Of a stretch of 64,000 nt of DNA, positions 17,035-62,474 are shown piece after piece. The translations under genes were made by a program, and so were the position numbers. Position 1 is the first letter of the stretch. The number at the start of each line of letters is the position of its first letter. Source of the DNA: Bispira polyomma (lineage: Eukaryota); the NCBI GenBank assembly GCA_965649765.1, contig OZ287754.1:35836001-35900000 (forward strand), in the 5' to 3' direction. The notes under the pieces were generated by a model. The model was not told the DNA's origin and did not search any database. It saw nothing but the letters and a program-made list of their open reading frames with translations.

Positions 17035-18440
17035 TACCCTTCTTATCAAAAGTTCTTAAAAAAGCTTCTTAATCAACTTAATATTCATGTCGAAAACCAT
17101 AAAGTTTTTCCAACCTACCAATCTGCTGACAGAGAGAACCACTTGAGTGAAAGTGCTCCAGTTAAATTAACTAATGACATCCCGTTGTCTATGGAAAAAT
17201 AACAAGTAACAGCAATAATGGCAATTGACTTGTCTGCTGCCTTGACACAGTCGACAACAATATCTTACTTAAAGTCAAAAGCAGCTACTCTGACCAGATA
17301 CCTCATAACTTTTCAGTTCCTTAGGGAAGCTGTGTTGGCCTAGTTTGATACTCCCAATATGCCAGGATGATGAGACTCATTATCCCATCTGCAATGCAAT
17401 TCCATGGTTATGCAGACGACCATGCCATCAAACTTTCGTTTAGCAGTAGGGACAGTTTAGCAGAATATAATACCATATATAAAGCCCTAGGAGAGTGTGC
17501 AGAGGCTATAAATGATTGGATGAAACAGAACCAGTTAAAAATTAATAGTGCAAAAATAGAATACATCAGATTTTGTCATATCACACAACTTAAAAAGTGC
17601 ACAATAAATACGTTAAAGGTAAACAGCATTGATGTGACAGTCACTGACAATATTAAATACCTTGGTGTCCATCTAGATAACCACCTAGATTTTTAAAAAA
17701 ACATATTGCAAGCAAGTACATGGTTGCAAAGTTTAACATTCATAAAATCAGAAACATCAGGAATATTCTCACATATTCACATGCAATATTATTCGGCCCA
17801 CCAAAAAAGTCAATTAAGATGATGCAGCATGTGCAAAATGTAGCATCCAAGCTTGTATTAGGTTCAAACAAATATGCCAGTTTAACAGAAGGATGGAGAG
17901 TACTACACACTGGCTTCTAAATCAAAGCCTGTATAGAATTTAAAATCATCTTACTTGTTTACAAATACCTTATCGGTTATAGCCTGTGCACCAGACTACC
18001 TAATACAATTACTAACCTTCAAACTTGTTCATAGACCTTGTTTAAGGTCATTCAATGACGGCATTATGACTTTTACTCTATACCCCTCTGTGGATTGAAA
18101 CTTTACTTTTGGGATAAAATGAAGAAGCTGGTAGTTTTTAAAAAACTAGTGCTGACACCTTTTGAATGGAATATGAACTGTTTAAAATGCAGTCATACAG
18201 TGCTTCACCAACAGTAAAGACTTGTGAGCAAGTCTAACTTGTTCAGAGACAATGACTGAGAAAATCATCTGACCCTTACCGACTTCTGACACCAAGGACA
18301 ACAAGAAATATCTTTGGAGACAGATCCTTCAGTGTTTGTGGCCCCAAATTATGGAACAGCATTCTTTATTCTACCAAGGCATCAGAAAACTTAACAACTT
18401 TCAAAAAGAGGCTAAAAACCCATCTATTTTAAAAGTACCA
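17035..18440 (+). mobile_element. Decayed L2/CR1-group LINE reverse-transcriptase fragment
   Basis: AIDLSAA.DTVD (~17220), VP*GS, MQFHGYADDH (YADD ~17408), LKINSAKIE, IKYLGVHLD, then GDRSFSVCGPKLWNS...FKKRLKTHLF near 18320-18430; many indels and stops. Confidence 0.88.
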
Positions 18441-27364: not shown

Positions 27365-28670
27365 TTTTAGTTTCCTCCCTCTATCGTCCACCTAACCCTT
27401 CTATATCTGCCTTCAATCAAGCGTTTTCTCGTTTCCTTGAATCTTTTTCCTCCTCCCGCTGGAATCAATTGTACTTGGTGACTTCAACATCAAAGTTGAC
27501 ATCAATAACACGACAACCAAAGATTTCTACAGCCTCTTCAATATTTTTAAATTCGAACAGTTTATTTCCTGTCCCACTCATCTCCATAACCACATTCTTC
27601 ACCTGCTCATTGCTCGACCAGAGTCCAAGCTGATACATGATGTATGGGTTACTGACGGGGTGTCTGACCATCTTCCCACTTTTGCACATCTCGTGATTCC
27701 CAAACCACTGTCACACAAACCTTAGGTAATAAAATGACACTCAAATCTATCTCTCTCTTAACACTCAGAATGCCAGAAACAACCTGGATTTACTTGTCGA
27801 CTGTCTCTCCTCAGTTCACTGAAACTAAACCCTTACACAACTGAATTCATCCTAATTGGAAAGAAACAGAGTGAATACTTAAGATCACTTTTCCCAATTA
27901 CACTACTGGGCAATAAGATTCAACCTTCAGACCAGGTCAAAAACCTAGGTGTCACTATCGACCCTGCTTTTTCATTTCTTCCTCACAGTAACAAGATCCG
28001 CCGCTCCTGTTACTATCACATTCGGGACTTCAAAATAATCAGAAATTATCTGTCACTGGATACTGCTATCACTGTGGCCAACGCTTTTGTAAGTAGCCAT
28101 CTTGACTACTGTAATTCTCTTCTGTATGGAGCCAATAAGCCCCACATGAACAAGTTGCAGTCCATTCAAAACTATCTATGTAGAGTCAGCTTTCGTTTGG
28201 GAATCAGTACTAATGTCACTCCATACCTCAAAAAACTTCACTGGCTATCGAATCCTGTTAAAATGCACGTAACCATTTTTAAAGCTGTTGTCTCTCAACA
28301 GCCTTACTACCTCGCTACTAAACTCTCCTTCAGCAGCCAAAAAGGGGGAAAAGACTCTCTCTTTCCTCTATAAAACCCACCAAGAGGGTTGGATCTAGAA
28401 CCTTCATGGTCGCCGCCCCTATGTTATGGAACAGCCTTCCAGTTGAACTTAGACTGCTTAAAACACTCTCTGGTTTAGGAGAAAGCTTAAAACCTATCTC
28501 TTCAGGCTCGCCTATCCACCGTAGTCCTCTTCCTGGGCACTGACGCATCCATCCTTACAACCTGGGTATGGTTTTTTTTATTTTTCTATTGGCTGATTGA
28601 TTCTGATGTTACGCCTTACAAGATGCCTAGCATCAATAAGGCGCATTAAAAATGTACAATACAATACAAA
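27365..28670 (+). mobile_element. Internally deleted L2/CR1-group LINE (APE C-terminal half joined to RT C-terminus and 3' UTR)
   Basis: LYRPP, VLGDFNIKVD, PTH and GVSDH (endonuclease) at 27380-27690. Then KLNP..TEFILIG, VKNLGVTID, AFVSSHLDYCNSLLYG, KKLHWL, GSRTFMVAAPMLWNSLP, LKTYLF. Tail GCGCATTAAAAATG(TACAA)n. Confidence 0.9.
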
Positions 28671-36180: not shown

Positions 36181-38259
36181 TAAGCCAGGCCTGAGTACTA
36201 CATAAAATTGTGTTTTTTGAAGGCCTTAATACAGTGGGAAAGGGAGGAATTTATGATATTTAGTAAAATGTTATACAAAAAGGCAAAATATTTCTTGTAT
36301 ATGCTATGTGCACAGGATGGAATGTTTGAAGGCTATTATAATGAAATGTTTAATAAAAGAAAGCTTTTGTTAGGGAGTGCCAGAGGTTAATTAATGCTTT
36401 AGATAGCAGATAACTGTAGGCACTATGCTGTATTTATTTGAATACGAATATAAATACGGTACTTCTAGATTGTTAGCTGTTCTGAAATGTTGTTTATATA
36501 AATGTTAAGACAGCCCCAGAAAGTCTAATAGCTCTCTGAGTAGTGGAACACTTCACTCTGATTAGATTGGAGACGACCGACCGACAAGCGTTGATGGGCC
36601 AGATAATTCTGACAATGAATTTGTTGATATAATCCTTCAGACTTATCAACATCCGGCAAATAAAAATCATGTAGAATTTGATGGAAAAATGCCTAGAATC
36701 CTATTGTGGATTTTCCGAGAGGTCTAAAATTAGCCCAAAATTTTGAAAACCTGAAAACTGAATAATCATATGACAAACATCTTTTAGACCATCTGAAGTA
36801 AACTATCAATTGGCATCAATTAAATTTATGTCTTACCCACGGCATTATTTTAAAAGTGTGAATTCTTACTATTTTCTATCCTCTAAACAACCATAAATCT
36901 GATCAAATTACAGACTTGTTGTCTTTGTGTACCAATGCCAGCCACACACAATAATCTTAAAGAGAGAAACTATTGTCTTAGGTCTATCCCTTTGAAATAC
37001 AAGGTAGCCTGAAACTCCAATTTCCTTTATAATAATGAGTCTTAGAATTGTAGTCACCCAAGTCTGAATAGCATAATATGCTCTACTAATCCTACTGCCT
37101 TTTACCGTTCCTGATAAGATCTTCAGATACTTCCAAATGTGTGATACACTAAATTCAATGTGTACATATTTAATATGTTTGTAGATCAAATGACGCTATC
37201 AGTGCCTCGGGTTTCAGAAGTCAAGCCAATAATTAAGTATCTTGTGATCAATGTTACAGTCTATTTTGGTAAACCCTTAATGATGTTTTGGACATTCTCA
37301 AGGCAGGAGTGACTGACCTGAATTAGGTCAAGATAAAGCTTTTTGACCTTGCTATAGTGAAGTTTTTTAATTAAGAATTTAGATGCAGGTTTGGGAATAT
37401 TTATTTATATATTCTTCTATTTACAGCTTTACAAAAATTTTATAAGACTTTTTATAACTTTAAAATATGCCAAACTGCATTATAACATGGCCACCATGGA
37501 CCGCTAAACGCTATGTTGAACATCTAATAATGACGTCTATGAGCAACGAGTGAAGTATAACATTCCATAATCACATTAAAAAGTTTTAAATAAAATAGTT
37601 ATGATATATATCATATAATAATGTATGTTTATGGAGAACCTAGTCGCACCTAGTCGCCTAGCAGAGGATCCTGTTTTCCAGAGCCTCTATTCTACCCGGG
37701 CTTCCCTAAAGAGAGGTTCCACATTCAAGTTCGATCGGCAAAAAGTCCCCGACTGTAATATCGGGGTGGTCGGGACCAAAAAATCAATAAAATCCACTTT
37801 TTTGGGCGGGAAAAAAAAATGTGCCCCAATCGAACTGATTGCGCGCCTTTTTGACGGGCCCACGACCACAATTATACGTACAAAAAGGCCATACGACTTT
37901 GAACTCCATTGACCCCGACCTTCCCGACCTTGATAGGATCGAACTTTTTGGCGATAGGATCGAACATATTGGCTTAGGATCAGACGTATTGACTACAGGA
38001 TCTGACGTATTGGTCATCCAGACCAATAGGATCGAACTTTCTGAAAGATGAAGTCAGGAGTGCTTTTAGACCCTGTAAGTACCCCTTTTTAAGCCCTAAA
38101 ACTCAGGAATTTTTGAGTAATCAGGTCATTAATAATTGAGTAATTGAGTAGAATGCCAGGAAGAAGTGATGAAGATTTTTCGAGGAGATTAGGGACATTT
38201 TTAGTTTTTTTTGAGATCGAAATATGTATCCTTATGCTTATATTACAATTTGAGAAAGA

Positions 38260-39455
38260 CAAGGCCCAGGCTCAGGAAGATTTGAACCCAACACCACCAC
38301 GTTCCCCTTGCACTCCCCCGGAGAAGATTAAACTTCCACATATGTCACCCATCTGCTGGGTCAAGCCTTGGATCAGTCAGAGAGATGCCCTAGGCTACTA
38401 CACAAACTTAGTGCCGGAGCTACAGGAAGGGAATGCAGCCTCATACAGGAATTTTTTCAGGCTACCACCTGATATATTTGAAGAAATCAAGGATAGGATA
38501 ACACCCCATGTGAAAAAAGAAACAACTTGGTACAGAAAGCCCTTGGATGTTGGACTGAAACTGGCTGTAACTTTGAGGCACCTGGCCACTGGGGAGAGCT
38601 ACAGGTACCTGTCCTACCAGTTCAGGGTGGGAAATCATCCATCACCAAGTTTATACCAGAAGTATACAAGGCCATCATTAGGGAATATGAGACAGAAAAT
38701 CTAGCCTGCCCAGCCACCCCCCGCAGACTGGCTGAAAATAGAAGAAGTCTACAGGAACAGGTGGAATATCCCTCATGCTGTTGGATCTATTGATGGGAAG
38801 CACGTGGCCATCAAGAAGCCTCCTAAGGCTGGGAGTGAATTTTACAACTACAAAGGCTTCCACTCCATTGTCCTGTTTGCCCTGGTTGATGCGGATTACA
38901 GATTTATTTGGGTGGACATTGGCTGTAGTGGTTCCTGTTCCGATGCCCAATTTTTTGCTCTGAGCTCAAGCAGAAAATAGAAGATGGATCCATTGGGCTG
39001 CCCAGACCTGCACCACTGTTTCAGGGGTCTCGACGTGACGTGGAATACTTCCTGCTAGGGGATGATGCCTTTAGATGATGAAACCCTACTCAAGGAAGGA
39101 ACTCACCCATGCACAGAGAATTTGTAACTACAGGATATCCAGGGGAAGGCGGGTAGTGGAGAACGCTTTTGGGATTTTGGCCAGCCGCTTCCGCTTATTA
39201 CTGACGACGATGCAACAGCACCTCCTAGTGGCCTCAAATCTGACATTGACATGTGTGATATTACAGCCGGTGTGGAAACCCACCACTATAGCACCCCAAC
39301 CCACAAGATGATCCACCTGAACCCGAGGTGCAGTTTGTAGGAGATCGACCGACCACCCACAGAAACCCATCCAGGTCGGCCAAAGAACAGAGGGATGTGT
39401 TAATGAACTTTTTTATGAATGAGTGGGCAGTCCTGTGGCAAGAGGAAAGAGTTTA
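38260..39455 (+). pseudogene. PIF/Harbinger DDE transposase (HARBI1-like), frameshifted
   Basis: [99 protein letters not shown]; at least 3 frameshifts. Confidence 0.93.
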
Positions 39456-46845: not shown

Positions 46846-48140
46846 TATAGATCATATGATACTAGTGTCATTTTACATGTTTCTCTTCAATTTATTTTGT
46901 ACTTGTATATATCAGAAAATACAATGTACATCTACATATATTAGGGTGTATGTTTGTGCATATATGTGCAAATATTCGCCTTAGTCTTGTCCAAGACTCT
47001 TACAGAAACAACACACGTACTTCTATGCATTCACGAAATGCATATGTAATAAAATAATATATCAACATTGTTTATGCAGTTATTGAGGACATCTTAGAAC
47101 TTGTGCTAGAAATCCTATAAAAGATACAGTATACAAGTGGAAATAGTACATTTAAACCTTCTATAACATAAAGGCCTGATACAAGCCTATGTTTTATAAC
47201 ACAAGTCACCCCATCTGTTACAAGACAAATTCTGGTGAAACATCTGGCCACAACTATATGTTCTCTGCAATGACTAATTACAGTTGTGCACTACTTAGAT
47301 TAATTAAGTCTCAAAACGAGTCAGAATGTTGCATACTTGGAATGCTTCTTACTTAAGACAATGATTTAGGACGTAAACAAAAAGTATAAAATTTGCCATT
47401 AAACTACTGTTATTGTATGTTTAACTATTGTTTTTATGTAATTTATATACATTTATAATAGTAAGTCTGTGTTTTTAATAAAGTTTGACTCTCTTTGTGT
47501 ACTTCAACTGGTAAAAGTATAGAGTACCTAAATATCACTAAATTCTGGCCATTGTTTATTTTGAATGGCTATAATAATGTGTCTGACTAAAGTGTTTTGA
47601 AGACAGATCTACAAAAACAAATTAATGGCCTCGTAATATCTTCGGCTGTGGCAAGAAAGATTACCATGATACCTTATGATACATTCTTTTGAAAAGAACT
47701 AGAGAATAGATTCAAATGATATTGGATTTGTATTAATTTGAGGACATCTTTTCAATCTCTGACATGTGACATTGAGATAATAACAGAAACATTTGTTTAA
47801 TACTATGACAAAGATTTGTTTCACATGGGAAGGGCTTGGTCACAGCTTTTTGTATATTTGTTTAATGTTGTGCTGAATATGTTGGAGTTATAATTTAAAA
47901 GAAGAAGCAGTGTTACTTCTGACCTTTCTATCAATGTACAAAGGAACATTTTTCTGAATTTAAGGGATTCTGTAGAAAAATAAAAGGTGATATTGACATT
48001 GCATTGCAGATGTATTTTAATGATAATACTAAAAGGAAATGATGTAAAATGCTTAAAGAGGAAAAGATGACAGTAGATCTGTAGTACCCTAGTATTATAG
48101 TTCTGAGATATTTGCTGTTCACTCTTTGACCTAATTAGGA

Positions 48141-49631
48141 ATGGAATATCAAAATTATCAAGGAAGTAGCTACAGATTCCCTCCACCAGAGGAATACACT
48201 TATTTTAGTAGAACAGAACATTCTAAAACAGATGTACATAACCCGTACAACCGGTTCTACCATGTATCTCCAGGTACACACCAACACACCAAAGAGGCAC
48301 AGCACACTCCTTATGACTATAACTACAGAGGATTCCCAGTGAAAGATGATACACAGTATCCATACGTTGCTGTTGATGATGGTTCAGCACATCAAACCAG
48401 GTTTGGCTCATCTAAAGATATTGCATTTGAATTCAATCATCCTACTCAGCCTCAACAAGTTCCACCTCGTATGTTCAATGGATATCCTACGTACGAAGTA
48501 GAAGTGTCTCCTCCATTTGAAAAAGCATATTTACCTCCATCAAAGGAAGACTTTGTGACATCAGCAACTGAAGTATTAACACAAAACCCCCTTATCAATA
48601 CCACAGATCTCTTGTTAGACAAAGATTTGAATGATACAAACTCCATAGAATCATTCTCGGGAAATCAGACTTTTACCCCAAATGACAACACCACATACTG
48701 TGGAACGGACATATCAGACCTTGGTAACAAAGTGTACCTGTTTGGTATAGGGTTTCTGATAGTTGTAGCAGTTTTACTAAATGGATTAGAGTTTGCCATC
48801 TTCAGAACCAAACCTCTTAGAAGTTACTCTTTCAGTGTATACCTCTCTGCTTTAGCTGTACTAGATTCTTTTTCATTATTTGGACACATTCCACGACGCT
48901 GGATGAATATCTTATATGAGACATTAGACTGGGGATTGGGAGTTACAGTATATGACACCAACTTAATAGCTTGCCGTGGACTGACCTACTTCAGCTACAT
49001 CTCAAGGTTTCTCTCGGCCTGGGTGGTTGTGGCTTTAGCAGCAGAAAGACTCATCGTTTCTAAAGATCCCTACAAGAAATCGAAAATACGGAAGCCCAAA
49101 ACTGCCTGTCATATCCTCGTTGGATTAATTATTGTGTCATTGGCTCTGAATTGCCATGTGATCTTCACCTGGGGTGTTGTGTCGAGGAATGACGTCACTA
49201 CCTGCTCGCCATTACAGGATACCCCTGAGCTGGCTTTGTTTTTGACCATATTAAGCCTGCTCAGTATTGTGGCATTGCCATTTGTCACTACCCTCATACT
49301 GACCGCCTTGATGCTTCAGCATCTACAGTCAAAAACATGGAAACTTCGACCAAGAAAAATGAGTATCAATGCTATAAATAAACTGCAATTTGAGAGGAAG
49401 GCGGTGCTCATGGTATCTATGATAACAGGGGTTTACGCTCTATTGAGTTTTCCTTTCACAGTATCTTGGCTGGTATTATTAGGCCAACACTTGGCACCAC
49501 CCCATAGTTCTTGTACCTTACTAAGAACGTACGTGGCAAAGGACATCACTGAAGTTATATATATGGCCAATTTTGCCGTAAAATTTGGCTTTTGTATATT
49601 TTGTGGGATGAATATCGTAAGCCATAAATGA
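48141..49631 (+). CDS. Class A (rhodopsin-like) GPCR, peptide-receptor-like orphan, intronless ORF, 496 aa
   Basis: Seven hydrophobic segments. TM2 YLSALAVLD; TM3 C...SAWVVVALAAERL (DRY variant); ECL2 Cys; TM5 LPF; TM6 LLSFP; TM7 YMANFAVKF. N-glycosylation sequons (NTT, NDT, NQT, NTT) before TM1. Confidence 0.92.
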   Translation: MEYQNYQGSSYRFPPPEEYTYFSRTEHSKTDVHNPYNRFYHVSPGTHQHTKEAQHTPYDYNYRGFPVKDDTQYPYVAVDDGSAHQTRFGSSKDIAFEFNHPTQPQQVPPRMFNGYPTYEVEVSPPFEKAYLPPSKEDFVTSATEVLTQNPLINTTDLLLDKDLNDTNSIESFSGNQTFTPNDNTTYCGTDISDLGNKVYLFGIGFLIVVAVLLNGLEFAIFRTKPLRSYSFSVYLSALAVLDSFSLFGHIPRRWMNILYETLDWGLGVTVYDTNLIACRGLTYFSYISRFLSAWVVVALAAERLIVSKDPYKKSKIRKPKTACHILVGLIIVSLALNCHVIFTWGVVSRNDVTTCSPLQDTPELALFLTILSLLSIVALPFVTTLILTALMLQHLQSKTWKLRPRKMSINAINKLQFERKAVLMVSMITGVYALLSFPFTVSWLVLLGQHLAPPHSSCTLLRTYVAKDITEVIYMANFAVKFGFCIFCGMNIVSHK

Positions 49632-50958: not shown

Positions 50959-51326
50959 CTAGGCATGAGACTCAATGGCAGGTGTTTCTACTACAGTAGG
51001 TCCTTCATATTTTGGGGGTGGGGAGAAGCCGCTTACTACAGGACCATCTATTGGTTTAGGTTGTTTGGGTTTTGCTGGTATAGCTGCTGCTGTTGTTGCT
51101 ACTCCCTCCGTACCACCATTATTTGCTGAGCCTTCCCCGCCATCAAATGTAGCTGTAGCAGTTTCATTGGATGGTTTGAATTCCACATCCCTGCCTTCCC
51201 ATGGATCCACAGATCCGCCATTTTGGAAAGGAGCAATTGGGCAATCCTCGTCCTTCTTGTCTTCGACCATGTGATTTTCACCATCGCTTGGGCTGATTTT
51301 GTTGTGGCGGTTTTTGTATTTGTACA
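50959..51326 (-). CDS. EGF-TM gene terminal exon (cytoplasmic tail)
   Basis: Acceptor GTTTTCAG|TG; (V)[15 protein letters not shown]...[21 protein letters not shown]. Confidence 0.88.
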
Positions 51327-54300
51327 CTGAAAACACCAAGGTAGATTCATTGATATAACACCTCAAAAATAGAAACATCAACCAGTTTAGAACCAGTACA
51401 TTTACTACAGAAATCACTGAAGTTATTTTTATTATATGAGGCTTTCACTTAAAGAGCACACTATTAAGTAGCTGGAGTAGTGTGTATTTTATTTCATTTA
51501 GCCTGTACAGAAAATGAGCTTCTTTGGTTATGATATTACTTTGACTTTTGATTACAATACTGACTTTTGCATACGATTATCAGTACTTTGAGTGTGTGGA
51601 AGATTTAGTTCGACCTATATGGAACAGATTAGAAAATCATCAACTACATGTATAATCCCCTTATCTTTGACACATCAGGCTTTTCATTGGATAAACAGGT
51701 TCATGGTTAGTTCTCGTTCTACATGGCCAGCAATGTTGGCAGTATACAACTTGAGAGTGAGACAGTAATATCACTAAGTAAGACTCAATACCTCCCTGTG
51801 TTTGCTAATTTCAATTGATACATGAATCTTTATACAAACTGCTTGAGCTTAAGTTAGCACTATTGTATGCTTCAGCACTTCAATACCTAGCGATGTGACA
51901 TCTGCACTTGCCAGAACTTTACTAAGTACCAACATGTGCACTTACCAGAACTTAAGTAACTACCGATATGATATCTACATTTACCAGTATTTGAGTAAAA
52001 CTACCAATAAAACTTTTTGGCGATTCAAGTGTGCACGTATAATCAGGAGAAATACACACATGTGTAACTGATAGTAGAATAAAGGTCACAAAAGTCAAGG
52101 CTTTCTACGTCCATTTCAAAATTCATATTAACATGGTATATAAAGCACCATTGTAGGCAATAGTGGTTTCTATTAAAAGGTCTTGGTTAATAATTTTTCA
52201 CTCTGACCATTTTTTGGGGGAATAAAAACACCTTACAACAGTTACTTTATGAAAATATGGTTATGCTACTTGTCTTTAGTTATATTTCACCCTATTTTGC
52301 GGCCTTGGTAAGTTGTGAATCCCGAACCAAAACCGTCATCTTTTATACATGCACAGTTGAATGCCTGGTTTATATACTTTCTCTGTACTTACCAATAACG
52401 GCACTGACTATCAGCACTGTGGCAATGACCAGAATGACTATATACTCTGTAGTTACCAACAACTGCACTCACTATCAGCACTGCGGCTATGACAAGGATG
52501 ACTATATACTCTGTACTTACCAACAACTGCACTGACTACCAACACTGCGGCTATGACCAGGATGACTATATACTCTGTACTTACCAACAACTGCACTGAC
52601 TACTAGCACTGATGCTATGACTGTGACCAGGATGACTATATACTCTCTGTACTTACCAACAACTGCAATGACTATCAGCACTGCGGCTATGACCAGGAAG
52701 ACTATATACTCTCTGTACTTACCAACAACTGCACTGACTATCAGCACTGCTGCTATGACTATGACCAGGATGACTATCAGACTTATTGAGGCACTCTGCC
52801 AAGAACTTGTTTCTTCCCCTGTCTGTGCCTCAGCTGTGGGGTCTGATAGAATACAAATTATTGTCAGTAAGAATTTGAATTGAATTTGGATATTTAACGT
52901 CCACTCTAGTACCTGTTTAGGTTATATTAGGACGGGTAGTTGGAAACGCTGGAGGAAACACTGCATACAGTCGGTCAAGGTTCTGCACTGAAACCAGCAG
53001 CCCACAGTAAGGAACTACCACCTTTTCCACATAGGCATCGACGGGATTCAAACTCACGCCGCCCAGAGGTGAGAGACCAGTGATTGTGAAGTCCTATGCT
53101 TGCTAACCACTAGGCCACCGCTGCCCCATTATCAGTAAGAAGGGCCCTCTAATAGATTATCATGCCAATACCATGTCTATACTTTTGCATATTAATCTAA
53201 CTAGCAGGCCAGGGGGGCGGCTATTGGTAGTATAAGTTTTTATTTCACTTCCAAACAATGATAAACAAAAATGTATGATGTTTTATTTTGATGTAATAAA
53301 TTACAAATTTCAGTTATTTTAAGCTAGGTTGAGGTTCATGTGTACCTTTGACCAAAGTCAGCAGGATCTACATGTTATCTGATAATAATAATAATAATAA
53401 TAATAACATGATTTGGTTAGGGGAAACTGCACTGTAAAAAGTAAAAAATGCAATGCAATAACAAACATCAATGACTTACCATCTAAATGACAAAGGACAC
53501 CTGTAAATCCATCAAGACAGGCACAAGTGAAGCTGTCTCCATCCAGTACACAGGTAGCGCCATTTTGACAAGGACCAGAACTGCAGGGGCTGACCTCACA
53601 GTGCTGTCCAGAGTACCCAGCATTACAGGAACAGTTGTAACTGCCAACGTCTGTGGTAGTAACAGTAATTTACTAATCTATTATAATATCACTTTCAACA
53701 ACTGCGTATAATATCAAAACAGAAAGTTTAGTTGTGGATGATAATTTATTTTTAACAGTAAGTTTATTGGTAAAGGGTAGATGGTCAAGATTTCTGAACT
53801 GCATACCGCCGGCTTTCAGCAAATCTACAGCTGACTTTTCCACAAACATGCCTTGGACAAAATTCAAACAAACAATGGCAGAAGTGGGAGACAAGACTGT
53901 TACCTCTACACCATGGATGCAGTACATTGAAACCTAAGTTAACTTTTTATTGATTAATACAATTGTAAGAAGTAGTCTGATTGGCTAAAAGTAAGGAAAC
54001 TCTGCAAGATTCATTTGGGAATATGGCCCCAGGACAATGTTGAGCAGGTAGTTTCTTGATGGTGGTAACCAGCAGAGGTTAGTTGAATCATTTGTTTTAA
54101 TATAAACCACTGGGTTTACTGTCAAATTTGCCATATTTTCTAGGGTTGCGATACAAACTGCAGAGGTAGTAGGTGAGAGTGTTTACCCGACACCAGCCAT
54201 GCGCTTCACTTTAGTAATAAATAATGCAAACATATTTCACTTGACACTTACTGTCTAAGATGTTGCATGTACCAGACTCCATTTCTAAGTAGGCACATGG

Positions 54301-60300: not shown

Positions 60301-62474
60301 CATGGAATCAATATCACTCTGCCATATTTATAGTTTTTATTGTTTTATGCTAAAATGTTTACATGAAATCTTCAATTTGATGAACATTCCATTGTTCAAA
60401 CAACTGATCACTCTCCTGTTTGAATAATAGAGGTTGTAGTCTTACCGATAAAACCAGGAATACAGGTACAGTTGTAGTCATTGATGAGGTCAGTACAAGC
60501 AGCATTGTTGTCACACGGCTCAGGCTCACACTCGTCTATATCTGTCTCACAGTACTGGTCGGTAAATCTAAAACATAGGTTTACACTGGTCGGTAAATCT
60601 AAAACATAGGTTTACACTGGTCGGTAAATCAAAAACATAGGTTTACACTGGTCGGTAAATCTAAAACATAGGTTTACACTGGTCCGTGAATCTAAAACAT
60701 AGGTTTACACTGGTCAGTCAATCTAAAATACATGCTCACACTGGTCCGTGAATCTAAAACATAGGTTTACACTGGTCAGTCAATCTAAAATACATGCTCA
60801 CACTGGTTTGTAAATCTAAAACATAGGTTTACACTGGTCAGTCAATCTATAACACAGGCTCACACTGGTCAGTAAATCTAAAACACAGGTTCACACTGGT
60901 CAGTAAATCTAAAGTACAGACCACCTCTGAACAAAGACATGTCTATATTCAGTAGTACTTAAGCTGGTACACATTCAGTGTGATACATACCCTGCTACAC
61001 ATTCATACTGTAGTCCATACCCTGGTACACATTCAGTGTGATACATACCCTGGTACACATTCAGTGTGATACATACTCTGGTACACATTCAGTGTAGTAC
61101 ATACCATGGTACACATTCAGTGTAGTACATACGCTGGTACACATTCAGTGTAGTATATACCCTAGTACACATTCAGTGTAGTACATACCCTGGTACACAT
61201 TCAGTGTAGTACATACCATGGTACACATTTAGTTAGTACATAACATGGTACACATTTAGTGTAGTACATACCATGGTACACATTCAGTGTAGTACATACC
61301 ATGGTACACGTTTAGTTAGTACATACCATGGTACACATTCAGTGTGATACATACCCTGCTACACATTCAGTGTAGTACATACCCTGGTACACATTCAGTG
61401 TAGTACATACCCTGGTACACATTCAGTGTGATACATACCATGATACACATTTAGTTAGTACATACCATGGTACACATTTAGTGTAGTACATACCATGGTA
61501 CACATTCAGTGTAGTACATACCATGGTACACATTCAGTGTAGTACATACCCTGGTACACATTCAGTGTGATAATACCATGGTACACATTCAGTGTAGTAC
61601 ATACCCTGGTACACATTCAGTGTAGTACATACCATGGTACACATTTAGTTAGTACATACCATGGTACACATTTAGTGTAATACATACCATGGTACACATC
61701 TAGTGTAGTACATACCCTGGTACACATTCAGTGTAGTACATACCATGGTACACATTTAGTTAGTACATACCTTGGTACACATTCAGTGTGATAATACCAT
61801 GGTACACATTCAGTGTAGTACATACCCTGGTACACATTTAGTGTAATACATACTCTGGTACACATTCAGTGTAGTACATACCCTGGAACACATTCAGTGT
61901 AGTACATACCCTGGTACACATCTAGTGTAGTACATACCATGGTACACATTCAGTGTAGTACATACCCTGGTACACATTCAGTGTGATACATACCCTGGTA
62001 CACATTTAGTTAGTACATACCCTGGTACACATTCAGTGTAGTACATACCCTGGTACACATTTAGTGTAATACATACCCTGGTACACATTCAGTGTGATAC
62101 ATACCATGGTACACATACAGTGTATTACATACCCTGGTACACATTCAGTGTGATACATACCATGGTACACATACAGTGTAGTACATACCCTGGTACACAT
62201 ACAGTGTAATACATACCCTGGTACACATTCAGTGTGGTACATACCATGGTACACATACAGTGTAGTACATACCCTGGTACCCATTCAGTGTGATACATAC
62301 CATGGTACACATACAGTGTAGTACATACCCTGGTACACATACAGTGTAGTACATACCCTGGTACACATTCACATTCCCAGTCCCCCTCCAAATCCACACA
62401 GGTGCCGCCGTTCTGACACGTCACATTCTGTGTGATACATTCTTGCTCATTGGAACAGTTTTTCCCAATAAATC
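50959..62474 (-). CDS. Multi-EGF single-pass transmembrane protein (Notch/Crumbs/fibropellin-type EGF repeats); last 10 exons, ~523 aa, 5' end outside window
   Basis: Exons 62357-62474, 60446-60567, 58839-58952, 56925-57038, 55515-55638, 54670-54829, 54252-54411, 53480-53650, 52723-52842 and 50959-51326. All GT-AG and phase-consistent, giving 9 complete EGF domains, [24 protein letters not shown], basic stop-transfer YKYKNRHNK, and a tail ending AIESHA*. Confidence 0.92.
52375..52780 (-). repeat. 64-72-bp tandem array made of TM-exon 3' end + donor site, 6 copies
   Basis: ...GTT(G/A)TTG|GTAA(G/C)TACAGAG at 52723, 52657, 52585, 52521, 52457 and 52393. Confidence 0.93.
52723..52842 (-). CDS. 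EGF-TM gene transmembrane exon
   Basis: TATCAG|AC...[41 protein letters not shown]|GTAAGT, phase 1-1. Confidence 0.88.
52874..53127 (-). mobile_element. SINE family A, copy 5 (intronic, ~30 nt upstream of TM-exon acceptor)
   Basis: Full length; TSD ATT(G/A)TCAGTAAGAA. Confidence 0.95.
53480..53650 (-). CDS. EGF exon
   Basis: [57 protein letters not shown]; CAG| and |GTAAGT. Confidence 0.93.
54252..54411 (-). CDS. EGF exon
   Basis: [53 protein letters not shown]; TTTCAG| and |GTAAGT. Confidence 0.93.
54670..54829 (-). CDS. Calcium-binding EGF exon
   Basis: [53 protein letters not shown]; TAG| and |GTAAAA. Confidence 0.94.
55138..55389 (+). mobile_element. SINE family A, copy 6
   Basis: Full length; perfect TSD ACCATGAGTCAAA (55125-55137, 55390-55402). 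Confidence 0.95.
55515..55638 (-). CDS. EGF exon
   Basis: [42 protein letters not shown]; CAG| and |GTGAGT. Confidence 0.92.
55700..56468. repeat. 66-bp intronic minisatellite, ~11 copies
   Basis: Unit AAACTACCAGACATTAAAACCCCCTGATGGTAATCCCAATGGACCAGGACGTGTATTCTCTAGTAT. Confidence 0.95.
56453..56669. mobile_element. Small TIR element (MITE) abutting the 66-bp array
   Basis: Left TGTATTCTC..AACT...CTCAGACTCAAA versus reverse complement of right end TGTATTCTCAAAACT...CTCAGACTTAAA. Confidence 0.55.
56925..57038 (-). CDS. EGF exon
   Basis: [38 protein letters not shown]; TTTCAG| and |GTAAG; 114 nt, phase 1-1. Confidence 0.93.
57082..57255. repeat. ~98-bp tandem duplication just upstream of an acceptor
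   Basis: AAGG(T/C)TCTGTG..AATTGTGTAACATACAAT...AAATGCTCTCCTTGC twice. Confidence 0.85.
58303..58563 (+). mobile_element. SINE family A, copy 7 (poly-A tail)
   Basis: Full length with perfect B box GAGTTCGAATCC; ~A15 tail; TSD ACCTTTTAGTAGAG. Confidence 0.96.
58839..58952 (-). CDS. Calcium-binding EGF exon
   Basis: [38 protein letters not shown]; CAG| and |GTAAGT; 114 nt. Confidence 0.94.
59150..59400 (-). mobile_element. SINE family B, copy 3
   Basis: Shares CAACCAATT.TTCAGTTT.AGCT...GAGAGGGACAACTTTGT...CCTTGTCCAAGGGTACAATC with 19905-20040; head TGGCCTAGTGGTTAGAGT. Confidence 0.8.
60446..60567 (-). CDS. Calcium-binding EGF exon
   Basis: [40 protein letters not shown]; TTTTAG| and |GTAAG; phase 2-1. 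Confidence 0.94.
60555..60912 (-). repeat. 31-bp array of the splice-acceptor junction, ~11.5 copies
   Basis: Sense unit GTGTAAACCTATGTTTTAG|ATTTACCGACCA; the last copy is the real acceptor. Confidence 0.95.
60963..62370 (-). repeat. 28-bp array of the splice-donor junction, ~50 copies
   Basis: Sense unit GAATGTGTACCAGG|GTATGTACTACACT; the first copy is the real donor. Confidence 0.96.
62357..62474 (-). CDS. EGF exon (most 5' exon found in window)
   Basis: [40 protein letters not shown]; TTTTACAG| and GG|GTATGT; phase 1-2. Confidence 0.93.

What the first reader, a model, noticed from the sequence alone, without database searches (positions are those of the whole stretch)
60555..62370. An intron built almost entirely from tandem copies of its own donor and acceptor junctions
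Seen: the 1789-bp phase-2 intron (60568-62356) has three parts. It holds ~50 copies of a 28-mer (14 nt of exon end + GTATGTACTACACT), ~50 bp of unique sequence (60913-60962), and ~11 copies of a 31-mer (19 nt of intron end + 12 nt of next-exon start). Both splice sites therefore exist as many near-identical decoys. The nearest upstream acceptor copy is identical over a full unit, while the next has TAG changed to TTG. Upstream acceptors shift the frame or hit TAA. Every third donor is in frame: the one at 62273 would add 28 aa ([28 protein letters not shown]) inside an EGF domain. Known: tandem duplication of splice-site-bearing segments is a proposed route to intron gain. Inference: a ~100-bp ancestral intron was inflated ~20-fold from both junctions. 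The spliceosome either picks the outermost sites by exon context alone, or the arrays act as a copy-number-tunable rheostat of productive versus NMD splicing.
Basis: partly seen in the sequence, partly recalled or inferred. Interest (0 to 1): 0.88.

Follow-up and report, generated by a model that had tools for sequence, protein, structure and literature searches.

The report
Twin splice-junction minisatellites fill an intron
Both ends of this worm intron have been copied head-to-tail (51 and 12 copies) until little else is left; this is a known kind of repeat ("mirage" minisatellite), common in this genome, and nothing here shows that the extra splice sites regulate the gene.

Summary
Real. 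The 1,789-nt phase-2 intron (60568-62356, minus strand, EGF-repeat membrane-protein gene of a probable annelid) is about 98% repeat: 51 donor copies (28-mer) and 12 acceptor copies (31-mer). Read-derived contigs bridge both arrays and the spacer. This is the named "mirage" class (amphioxus Adh3 and globins; human F7 intron 7 VNTR, where only the most upstream donor is used). It is not peculiar to this intron. About 10% of sampled EGF/TSP1 exon junctions carry such arrays against about 1% expected, and three other introns have arrays at both ends. The orthologous intron in a relative has the same position, phase and splice-site letters, is 1,637 nt long and has no arrays. So the outermost sites are the ancestral ones, and the "~100-bp intron inflated 20-fold" is unsupported; the residual core is 54 nt. 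Only 6 of 539 donor-acceptor pairings keep an open frame. No RNA data exist here, so site use and the rheostat idea are untested. Best reading: tolerated slippage-born minisatellites, outermost sites chosen by position. The scan found this class repeatedly elsewhere in this genome. The unexplained part is the genome-wide excess at junctions.

The parts
62357..62474 (-). Upstream EGF exon (118 nt, phase 1 to phase 2); its last ~15 nt are the exon part of the donor unit
   Evidence: 79% aa identical to the ortholog exon
60568..62356 (-). Intron, 1,789 nt, phase 2, about 98% repeat-derived
   Evidence: same position and phase as a 1,637-nt array-free intron in a relative
60952..62371 (-). Donor mirage: 28-mer x51, 49 copies with GT, 29 distinct unit types with repeated higher-order blocks; TGAAT microhomology at both array ends
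60909..60962 (-). 54-nt residual core from the last (dead, TT) donor copy to the first acceptor copy; about 30-40 nt is non-repetitive
   Evidence: bridged by read-derived contigs in three runs
60554..60913 (-). Acceptor mirage: 31-mer x12, 11 with AG, one TTG at 60630; alternating 62-nt dimer in the middle
60446..60567 (-). Downstream EGF exon (122 nt, phase 2 to phase 1)
   Evidence: 75% aa identical to the ortholog exon
52381..52759 (-). Another donor mirage in the same gene, on the transmembrane exon (64-72-nt unit, 5 decoys); absent in the relative

Best explanation
Two independent 'mirage' minisatellites in one old intron. Each began as a short tandem duplication straddling a splice junction. 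For the donor array this probably happened by slippage or template switching between two TGAAT motifs 28 nt apart (inferred from sequence). The arrays then grew by slippage or unequal exchange like any minisatellite. One exon keeps its full body on the outer side of each array, so the gene stays intact. The spliceosome mostly uses the outermost sites: the first donor met after the exon (shown for human F7, inferred here) and the acceptor defined across the real exon (inferred, less secure). Any leak is almost always out of frame or stopped and would go to NMD. The arrays are tolerated by-products of a genome-wide tendency in this lineage. Having both in one intron is about what the separate donor and acceptor rates predict.
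For: Unit anatomy, microhomology and higher-order blocks. Ortholog has the same junction letters and no arrays, so the arrays are lineage-specific and the outer sites ancestral. Both exons are intact and conserved. Junction arrays with at least 2 copies: EGF 8/78 vs 1.15% null, P=4e-6; TSP1 4/45 vs 1.1%, P=0.002. Triple donor motif: 986 matches vs 222 for the reversed control. 17 of 20 chromosome-1 donor-motif arrays start at apparent exon ends of unrelated genes, 7 Pfam-confirmed. Two of those 17 introns also carry an acceptor array, about the background rate, and a fibulin-like intron has the same double layout. 533 of 539 site pairings are frameshifted or stopped. Literature: no aberrant mRNA from amphioxus mirages; only the most upstream F7 donor is used.
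Against: No RNA reads exist for this organism, so site use is not shown. Decoy GT is not eroded and is slightly less variable than neighbouring columns (6 vs 11.7 expected variant alleles, P about 0.02, post hoc, 10 arrays). Units that are multiples of 3 are mildly depleted (7/38, P=0.03). Plain slippage does not explain a roughly 9-fold excess at junctions. A 5'-to-3' scanning rule protects the authentic donor but would favour an upstream decoy acceptor. The 54-nt residue is unexplained.
Confidence: 0.75

Rival explanations
1. Copy-number rheostat: decoy sites divert a share of transcripts to NMD, or to +28/+29-aa isoforms, in proportion to array length, and this is maintained by selection.
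For: 22 decoy donors are identical to the authentic 9-mer and the nearest acceptor is identical. Decoy GT is marginally over-conserved. Tandem repeats associated with splicing variation are reported in humans (PMC10078293, abstract only).
Against: Absent from the ortholog. Similar arrays sit on housekeeping genes of every kind. Tested cases show silent decoys. No special RNA fold over the acceptor array (z=0.51).
Confidence: 0.08
2. On origin, compatible with the best explanation: the seeds come from a transcription- or splicing-coupled mutational hot spot at exon-intron boundaries (for example pausing or R-loop repair near U1 binding), not from position-blind slippage.
For: About 9-fold excess at junctions. 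The intron-only part of donor units is short: median 13 nt, 16/29 at or under 14 nt vs 9.4 expected. Donor motif arrays are more enriched than acceptor ones (4.4x vs 2.1x).
Against: The breakpoint statistic is biased: 17 of 29 arrays were selected by a donor motif, microhomology is credited to the exon side, and two measurements failed on indels. A composition step at junctions, or survival bias (duplications inside exons are purged, those straddling a junction are harmless), could contribute. Neither was modelled.
Confidence: 0.35
3. Compensation: the intron interior was deleted down to about 54 nt and array growth was selected to restore a spliceable length.
For: Cores of 54 and 66 nt in two double-array introns. 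No sampled intron is under 228 nt. The ortholog has a similar total length, 1,637 vs 1,789 nt.
Against: Two other double-array introns keep about 430-450 nt of unique sequence. Orthologous intron lengths in this gene vary several-fold between the two species. One outgroup only.
Confidence: 0.07
4. Assembly artefact.
For: The donor array's length was not checked with reads, and the runs may be the assembly's own source.
Against: Units are heterogeneous (29 types in 50). Read-derived contigs bridge both arrays and the spacer in two samples. Many other arrays have their own units.
Confidence: 0.02

Closest known systems
Mirage minisatellites of amphioxus (Adh3, Canestro et al. 2002 as cited in PMC3087553; globins BflGb6/BflGb9, PMC3087553; PGBD5 and TnC, PMC3902484)
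   Same: Tandem unit spans an exon-intron boundary and duplicates the splice signal. Both 5' and 3' boundaries can be affected. Units of 28 and 31 nt fall in the reported 10-72 bp Adh3 range. Some copies have lost the signal.
   Different: Another phylum (probable annelid). 51 copies against 3-6 in the globin case. Both ends of one intron with almost no interior. Measured here at about 10% of sampled junctions, whereas the papers describe single loci. Splicing outcome and length instability were not tested here.
Human F7 intron 7 37-bp VNTR (PMC1557585)
   Same: First unit spans the exon-intron boundary and is followed by identical pseudo-donors.
   Different: 5-9 copies, donor side only, with experimental proof that only the most upstream site is used. 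There is no equivalent proof for acceptors or for this species.
Intron gain by tandem genomic duplication (Rogers model; PMC3087553, PMC4974935 abstract)
   Same: Tandem duplication of splice-signal-bearing DNA.
   Different: That route duplicates an exonic proto-splice site to make a new intron. Here the intron already exists at the same position in a relative without repeats.

Membership tests
Mirage minisatellite | Head-to-tail minisatellite array (unit of about 10-160 bp) | tested here: met
   28-mer x50.9 at 89% and 31-mer x11.6 at 86%
Mirage minisatellite | Repeat unit spans an authentic exon-intron boundary | tested here: met
   Units are 15+13 and 14+17 nt exon/intron; the junction is orthologous to one in a relative
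Mirage minisatellite | Copies duplicate GT/AG signals, many but not all intact | tested here: met
   49/51 GT, 11/12 AG
Mirage minisatellite | Normal splicing at the authentic sites (reported property) | not testable with these tools
   No RNA run; only indirect support from intact, conserved exons
Mirage minisatellite | Length instability between alleles or cells (reported property) | tested here: inconclusive
   Contigs break inside the arrays; depth differences in run X3 may be library bias; higher-order blocks show past turnover
Intron gain by tandem duplication | Intron absent in relatives, its ends matching the duplicated exonic segment | tested here: not met
   Same intron, same phase, 1,637 nt, no repeats in the relative
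Regulated unproductive splicing (AS-NMD) | Detectable NMD-sensitive isoform | not testable with these tools
   No RNA data
Regulated unproductive splicing (AS-NMD) | Alternative sites conserved across species | tested here: not met
   Decoys absent from the one ortholog available

The most novel reading that the evidence does not exclude
This lineage has a splicing- or transcription-coupled mutational process that seeds tandem duplications at exon-intron boundaries genome-wide. It leaves thousands of junctions with rows of identical decoy sites, some of which leak in proportion to copy number. This intron would be an extreme case.
Probability: 0.25. Interest if true: 0.75.

Novelty: new member of a known kind. 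Interest (0 to 1): 0.4.

Why it matters
The locus itself is an extreme but ordinary mirage pair. Its value is as a natural experiment: 22 sequence-identical decoy donors and one identical decoy acceptor, in a genome where roughly one junction in ten has such decoys. One long-read transcriptome would test at scale whether position alone (first donor, exon-defined acceptor) sets splice-site choice, so far shown for donors at one human locus. The excess of repeats at junctions also raises an open question about whether splicing or transcription shapes where duplications arise. I found no paper describing this genome-wide or outside chordates, in a library that lacks most subscription journals.

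Tried and rejected
A 3n+1 bias of unit lengths seen in EGF/TSP1 arrays did not hold in the unbiased chromosome-1 set (5/7/10 for remainders 0/1/2). A rule that double-array introns always have a tiny core was rejected: 2 of 4 do not. RNA structure masking acceptor decoys: no signal. Other window arrays (e.g. 8423, 13635, 23905, 24785, 34578, 35216, 55735, 57076) showed no exon overlap on inspection. The kinase family search returned mostly intronless genes and was useless for junction counts; two of its loci served for taxonomy. No RNA runs were found. The original 2002 mirage paper is not held, so it is cited second-hand. The 1.4-kb donor array was left out of read laying because that tool turns away long repeats.

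Full report
Observation. The region lies in a minus-strand gene for a single-pass membrane protein with many EGF repeats. The genome is 1.035 Gb in 75 contigs. The best named DYRK2 hit is the annelid Ridgeia (79%), ahead of a chiton and a nemertean, so this is probably an annelid. Exons 62474-62357 and 60567-60446 flank a 1,789-nt phase-2 GT-AG intron. TRF finds a 28-mer x50.9 and a 31-mer x11.6, which together make up about 98% of the intron. There are 51 donor copies (49 GT, 23 with the exact authentic 9-mer) and 12 acceptor copies (11 AG; 60599 identical, 60630 TTG). Of 539 GT x AG pairings, six are in frame and stop-free: the authentic one, two decoy donors with the authentic acceptor (+28, +56 aa) and three decoy donors with acceptor 60599 (+29, +57, +85 aa). 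The every-third-donor rule breaks at the first 27-nt unit. The core between the last donor copy and the first acceptor copy is 54 nt.

Not an artefact. In three public runs (two samples, one study, probably the assembly's own project) a mismatch-free 174-nt contig spans three acceptor units, the spacer and the last donor unit. The units are heterogeneous, with 29 types among 50 and exact blocks of 55-78 nt recurring at longer offsets, as expected from stepwise slippage or unequal exchange. The donor array's total length remains unchecked. No RNA run exists.

Ortholog. The cytoplasmic-tail exon found a relative's 1.36-Mb contig with the same gene next to the same GPCR. Both flanking exons are there (79% and 75% aa identity). 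The intron has the same position and phase, begins GTATGTA, ends TGTTTTAG like ours, is 1,637 nt long and has no array. So the outermost sites are the ancestral ones, the arrays are lineage-specific, and no intron was gained. The proposed ~100-bp ancestor is unsupported: either the interior was lost here or it grew in the relative, and one outgroup cannot say which. The relative has its own decayed donor array at a different junction, so the process is not confined to this species.

Genome-wide context. The same gene has further donor arrays on the transmembrane exon (52381-52759) and on an upstream exon (46-mer x40, L036). Among exons picked by Pfam score alone, junction-spanning repeats with at least two intron-side copies occur at 8/78 EGF junctions (null 1.15%, P=4e-6) and 4/45 TSP1 junctions (null 1.1%, P=0.002). 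These junctions cluster in about twenty genes, so the P values are somewhat optimistic. A triple donor motif gives 986 matches against 222 for the reversed control; a triple acceptor motif gives 124 against 60. Of 20 chromosome-1 donor-motif arrays, 17 start at apparent exon ends. Seven are Pfam-confirmed (NopRA1, ankyrin, peptidase C78, bMERB, Sec63, malic enzyme, DUF7042), and several more I recognise from own knowledge with their next exon in view (CDK8, NagA, CYFIP). Double-ended introns recur. A fibulin-like intron of 476 nt has 12 donor and 3-4 acceptor copies with a 66-nt core. The CDK8-like and ASCC3-like introns have both arrays with about 430-450 nt of unique sequence. Two of 17 is about the background acceptor rate, so the double layout needs no special cause.

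Known class. Repeats whose unit spans an exon-intron boundary were named mirages in amphioxus Adh3 and found in globin, TnC and PGBD5 genes, at both 5' and 3' boundaries, without aberrant mRNA being detected (PMC3087553, PMC3902484). The human F7 intron 7 VNTR is the same arrangement on the donor side: its pseudo-sites are functional but unused, because the most upstream site wins (PMC1557585). The three structural criteria are met here; the splicing outcome could not be tested.

Mechanism. Shown: unit anatomy, lineage specificity, intact exons, frame consequences and genome-wide excess. Inferred: seeding by microhomology (TGAAT opens the donor unit in the exon and recurs where unique sequence resumes); growth by slippage; use of the first donor by position, as in F7; and use of the last acceptor by definition across the real exon, which differs from the nearest decoy only from base +15 onward. 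The acceptor step is the weak link. A 5'-to-3' scan would favour an upstream copy, several units carry a branch-point-like CTGAC, and no RNA structure masks them. This may be why acceptor arrays look rarer than donor arrays, which is inference only. Leak would mostly be removed by NMD, which could also have hidden it in the amphioxus RT-PCRs.

Signals that do not fit cleanly. Decoy GTs are not eroded and are slightly less variable than neighbouring columns (P about 0.02); multiples of three are mildly depleted (P=0.03); donor units tend to include only a short intronic piece. All three are post hoc, on small and partly selected samples. The roughly 9-fold excess at junctions is the robust unexplained fact; a junction-linked mutational process and survival bias were not separated.

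Earlier notes. The scan's other agents reported the same class many times in this genome. I reached the mirage reading from the literature first and measured the rates myself. Their 'annelid' label prompted my check, and their remark on units ending near the donor prompted.

Verdict. Observation confirmed; a new, extreme member of a known class; inflation of a tiny ancestral intron and the rheostat are unsupported. Interest 0.4, mostly for the genome-wide prevalence and the ready test of splice-site choice among identical sites.

Noticed in passing
window 52381-52759 (-): The first two decoy donors of the transmembrane-exon array are in frame and stop-free (66 and 72 nt). Each would add one more hydrophobic helix-like segment, which could flip the side of the membrane on which the tail ends up. 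The relative lacks the array.
   Followed up: partly
L036 1906-3738 (G000:C7, about 0.9-2.7 kb past the window end): 46-mer x40 donor mirage after another EGF exon of the same gene; a 31-mer array abuts an acceptor at L036 7549-7801 without clearly including exon sequence.
   Followed up: partly
L081 6290-6500 (relative, ENA ERZ22147071): Decayed ~30-nt donor mirage at a junction that has no array in the window's species.
   Followed up: partly
L035/L015, G000:C4 about 102485608-102486083: Fibulin-like intron with the same double-array layout and a 66-nt core; neighbouring junctions of that gene also carry arrays.
   Followed up: partly
G000:C10:29164085-29192757: About 25 TSP1 exons at a regular ~1,140-nt spacing with near-equal scores, i.e. 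a recent whole exon-plus-intron tandem expansion.
   Followed up: no
window 50965-51324 (-): The cytoplasmic tail ends with a PPxY motif conserved in the relative, a possible WW-domain ligase site (own knowledge); no Pfam match.
   Followed up: no
window 48135-49628 (+): Single-exon rhodopsin-type GPCR (7tm_1/Srw), convergent with the EGF gene and syntenic in the relative.
   Followed up: partly
L042-L048: Many dispersed, near-identical intronless kinase ORFs of about 411-418 aa on different chromosomes, sharing flanks; possibly carried by a mobile element.
   Followed up: no
window 38144-38701 (+), 17349-17693 and 27762-28370 (+): Fragments resembling a Harbinger-type transposon protein and LINE reverse transcriptases, by eye only; the two scanned (38144, 27762) had no Pfam hit.
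   Followed up: no
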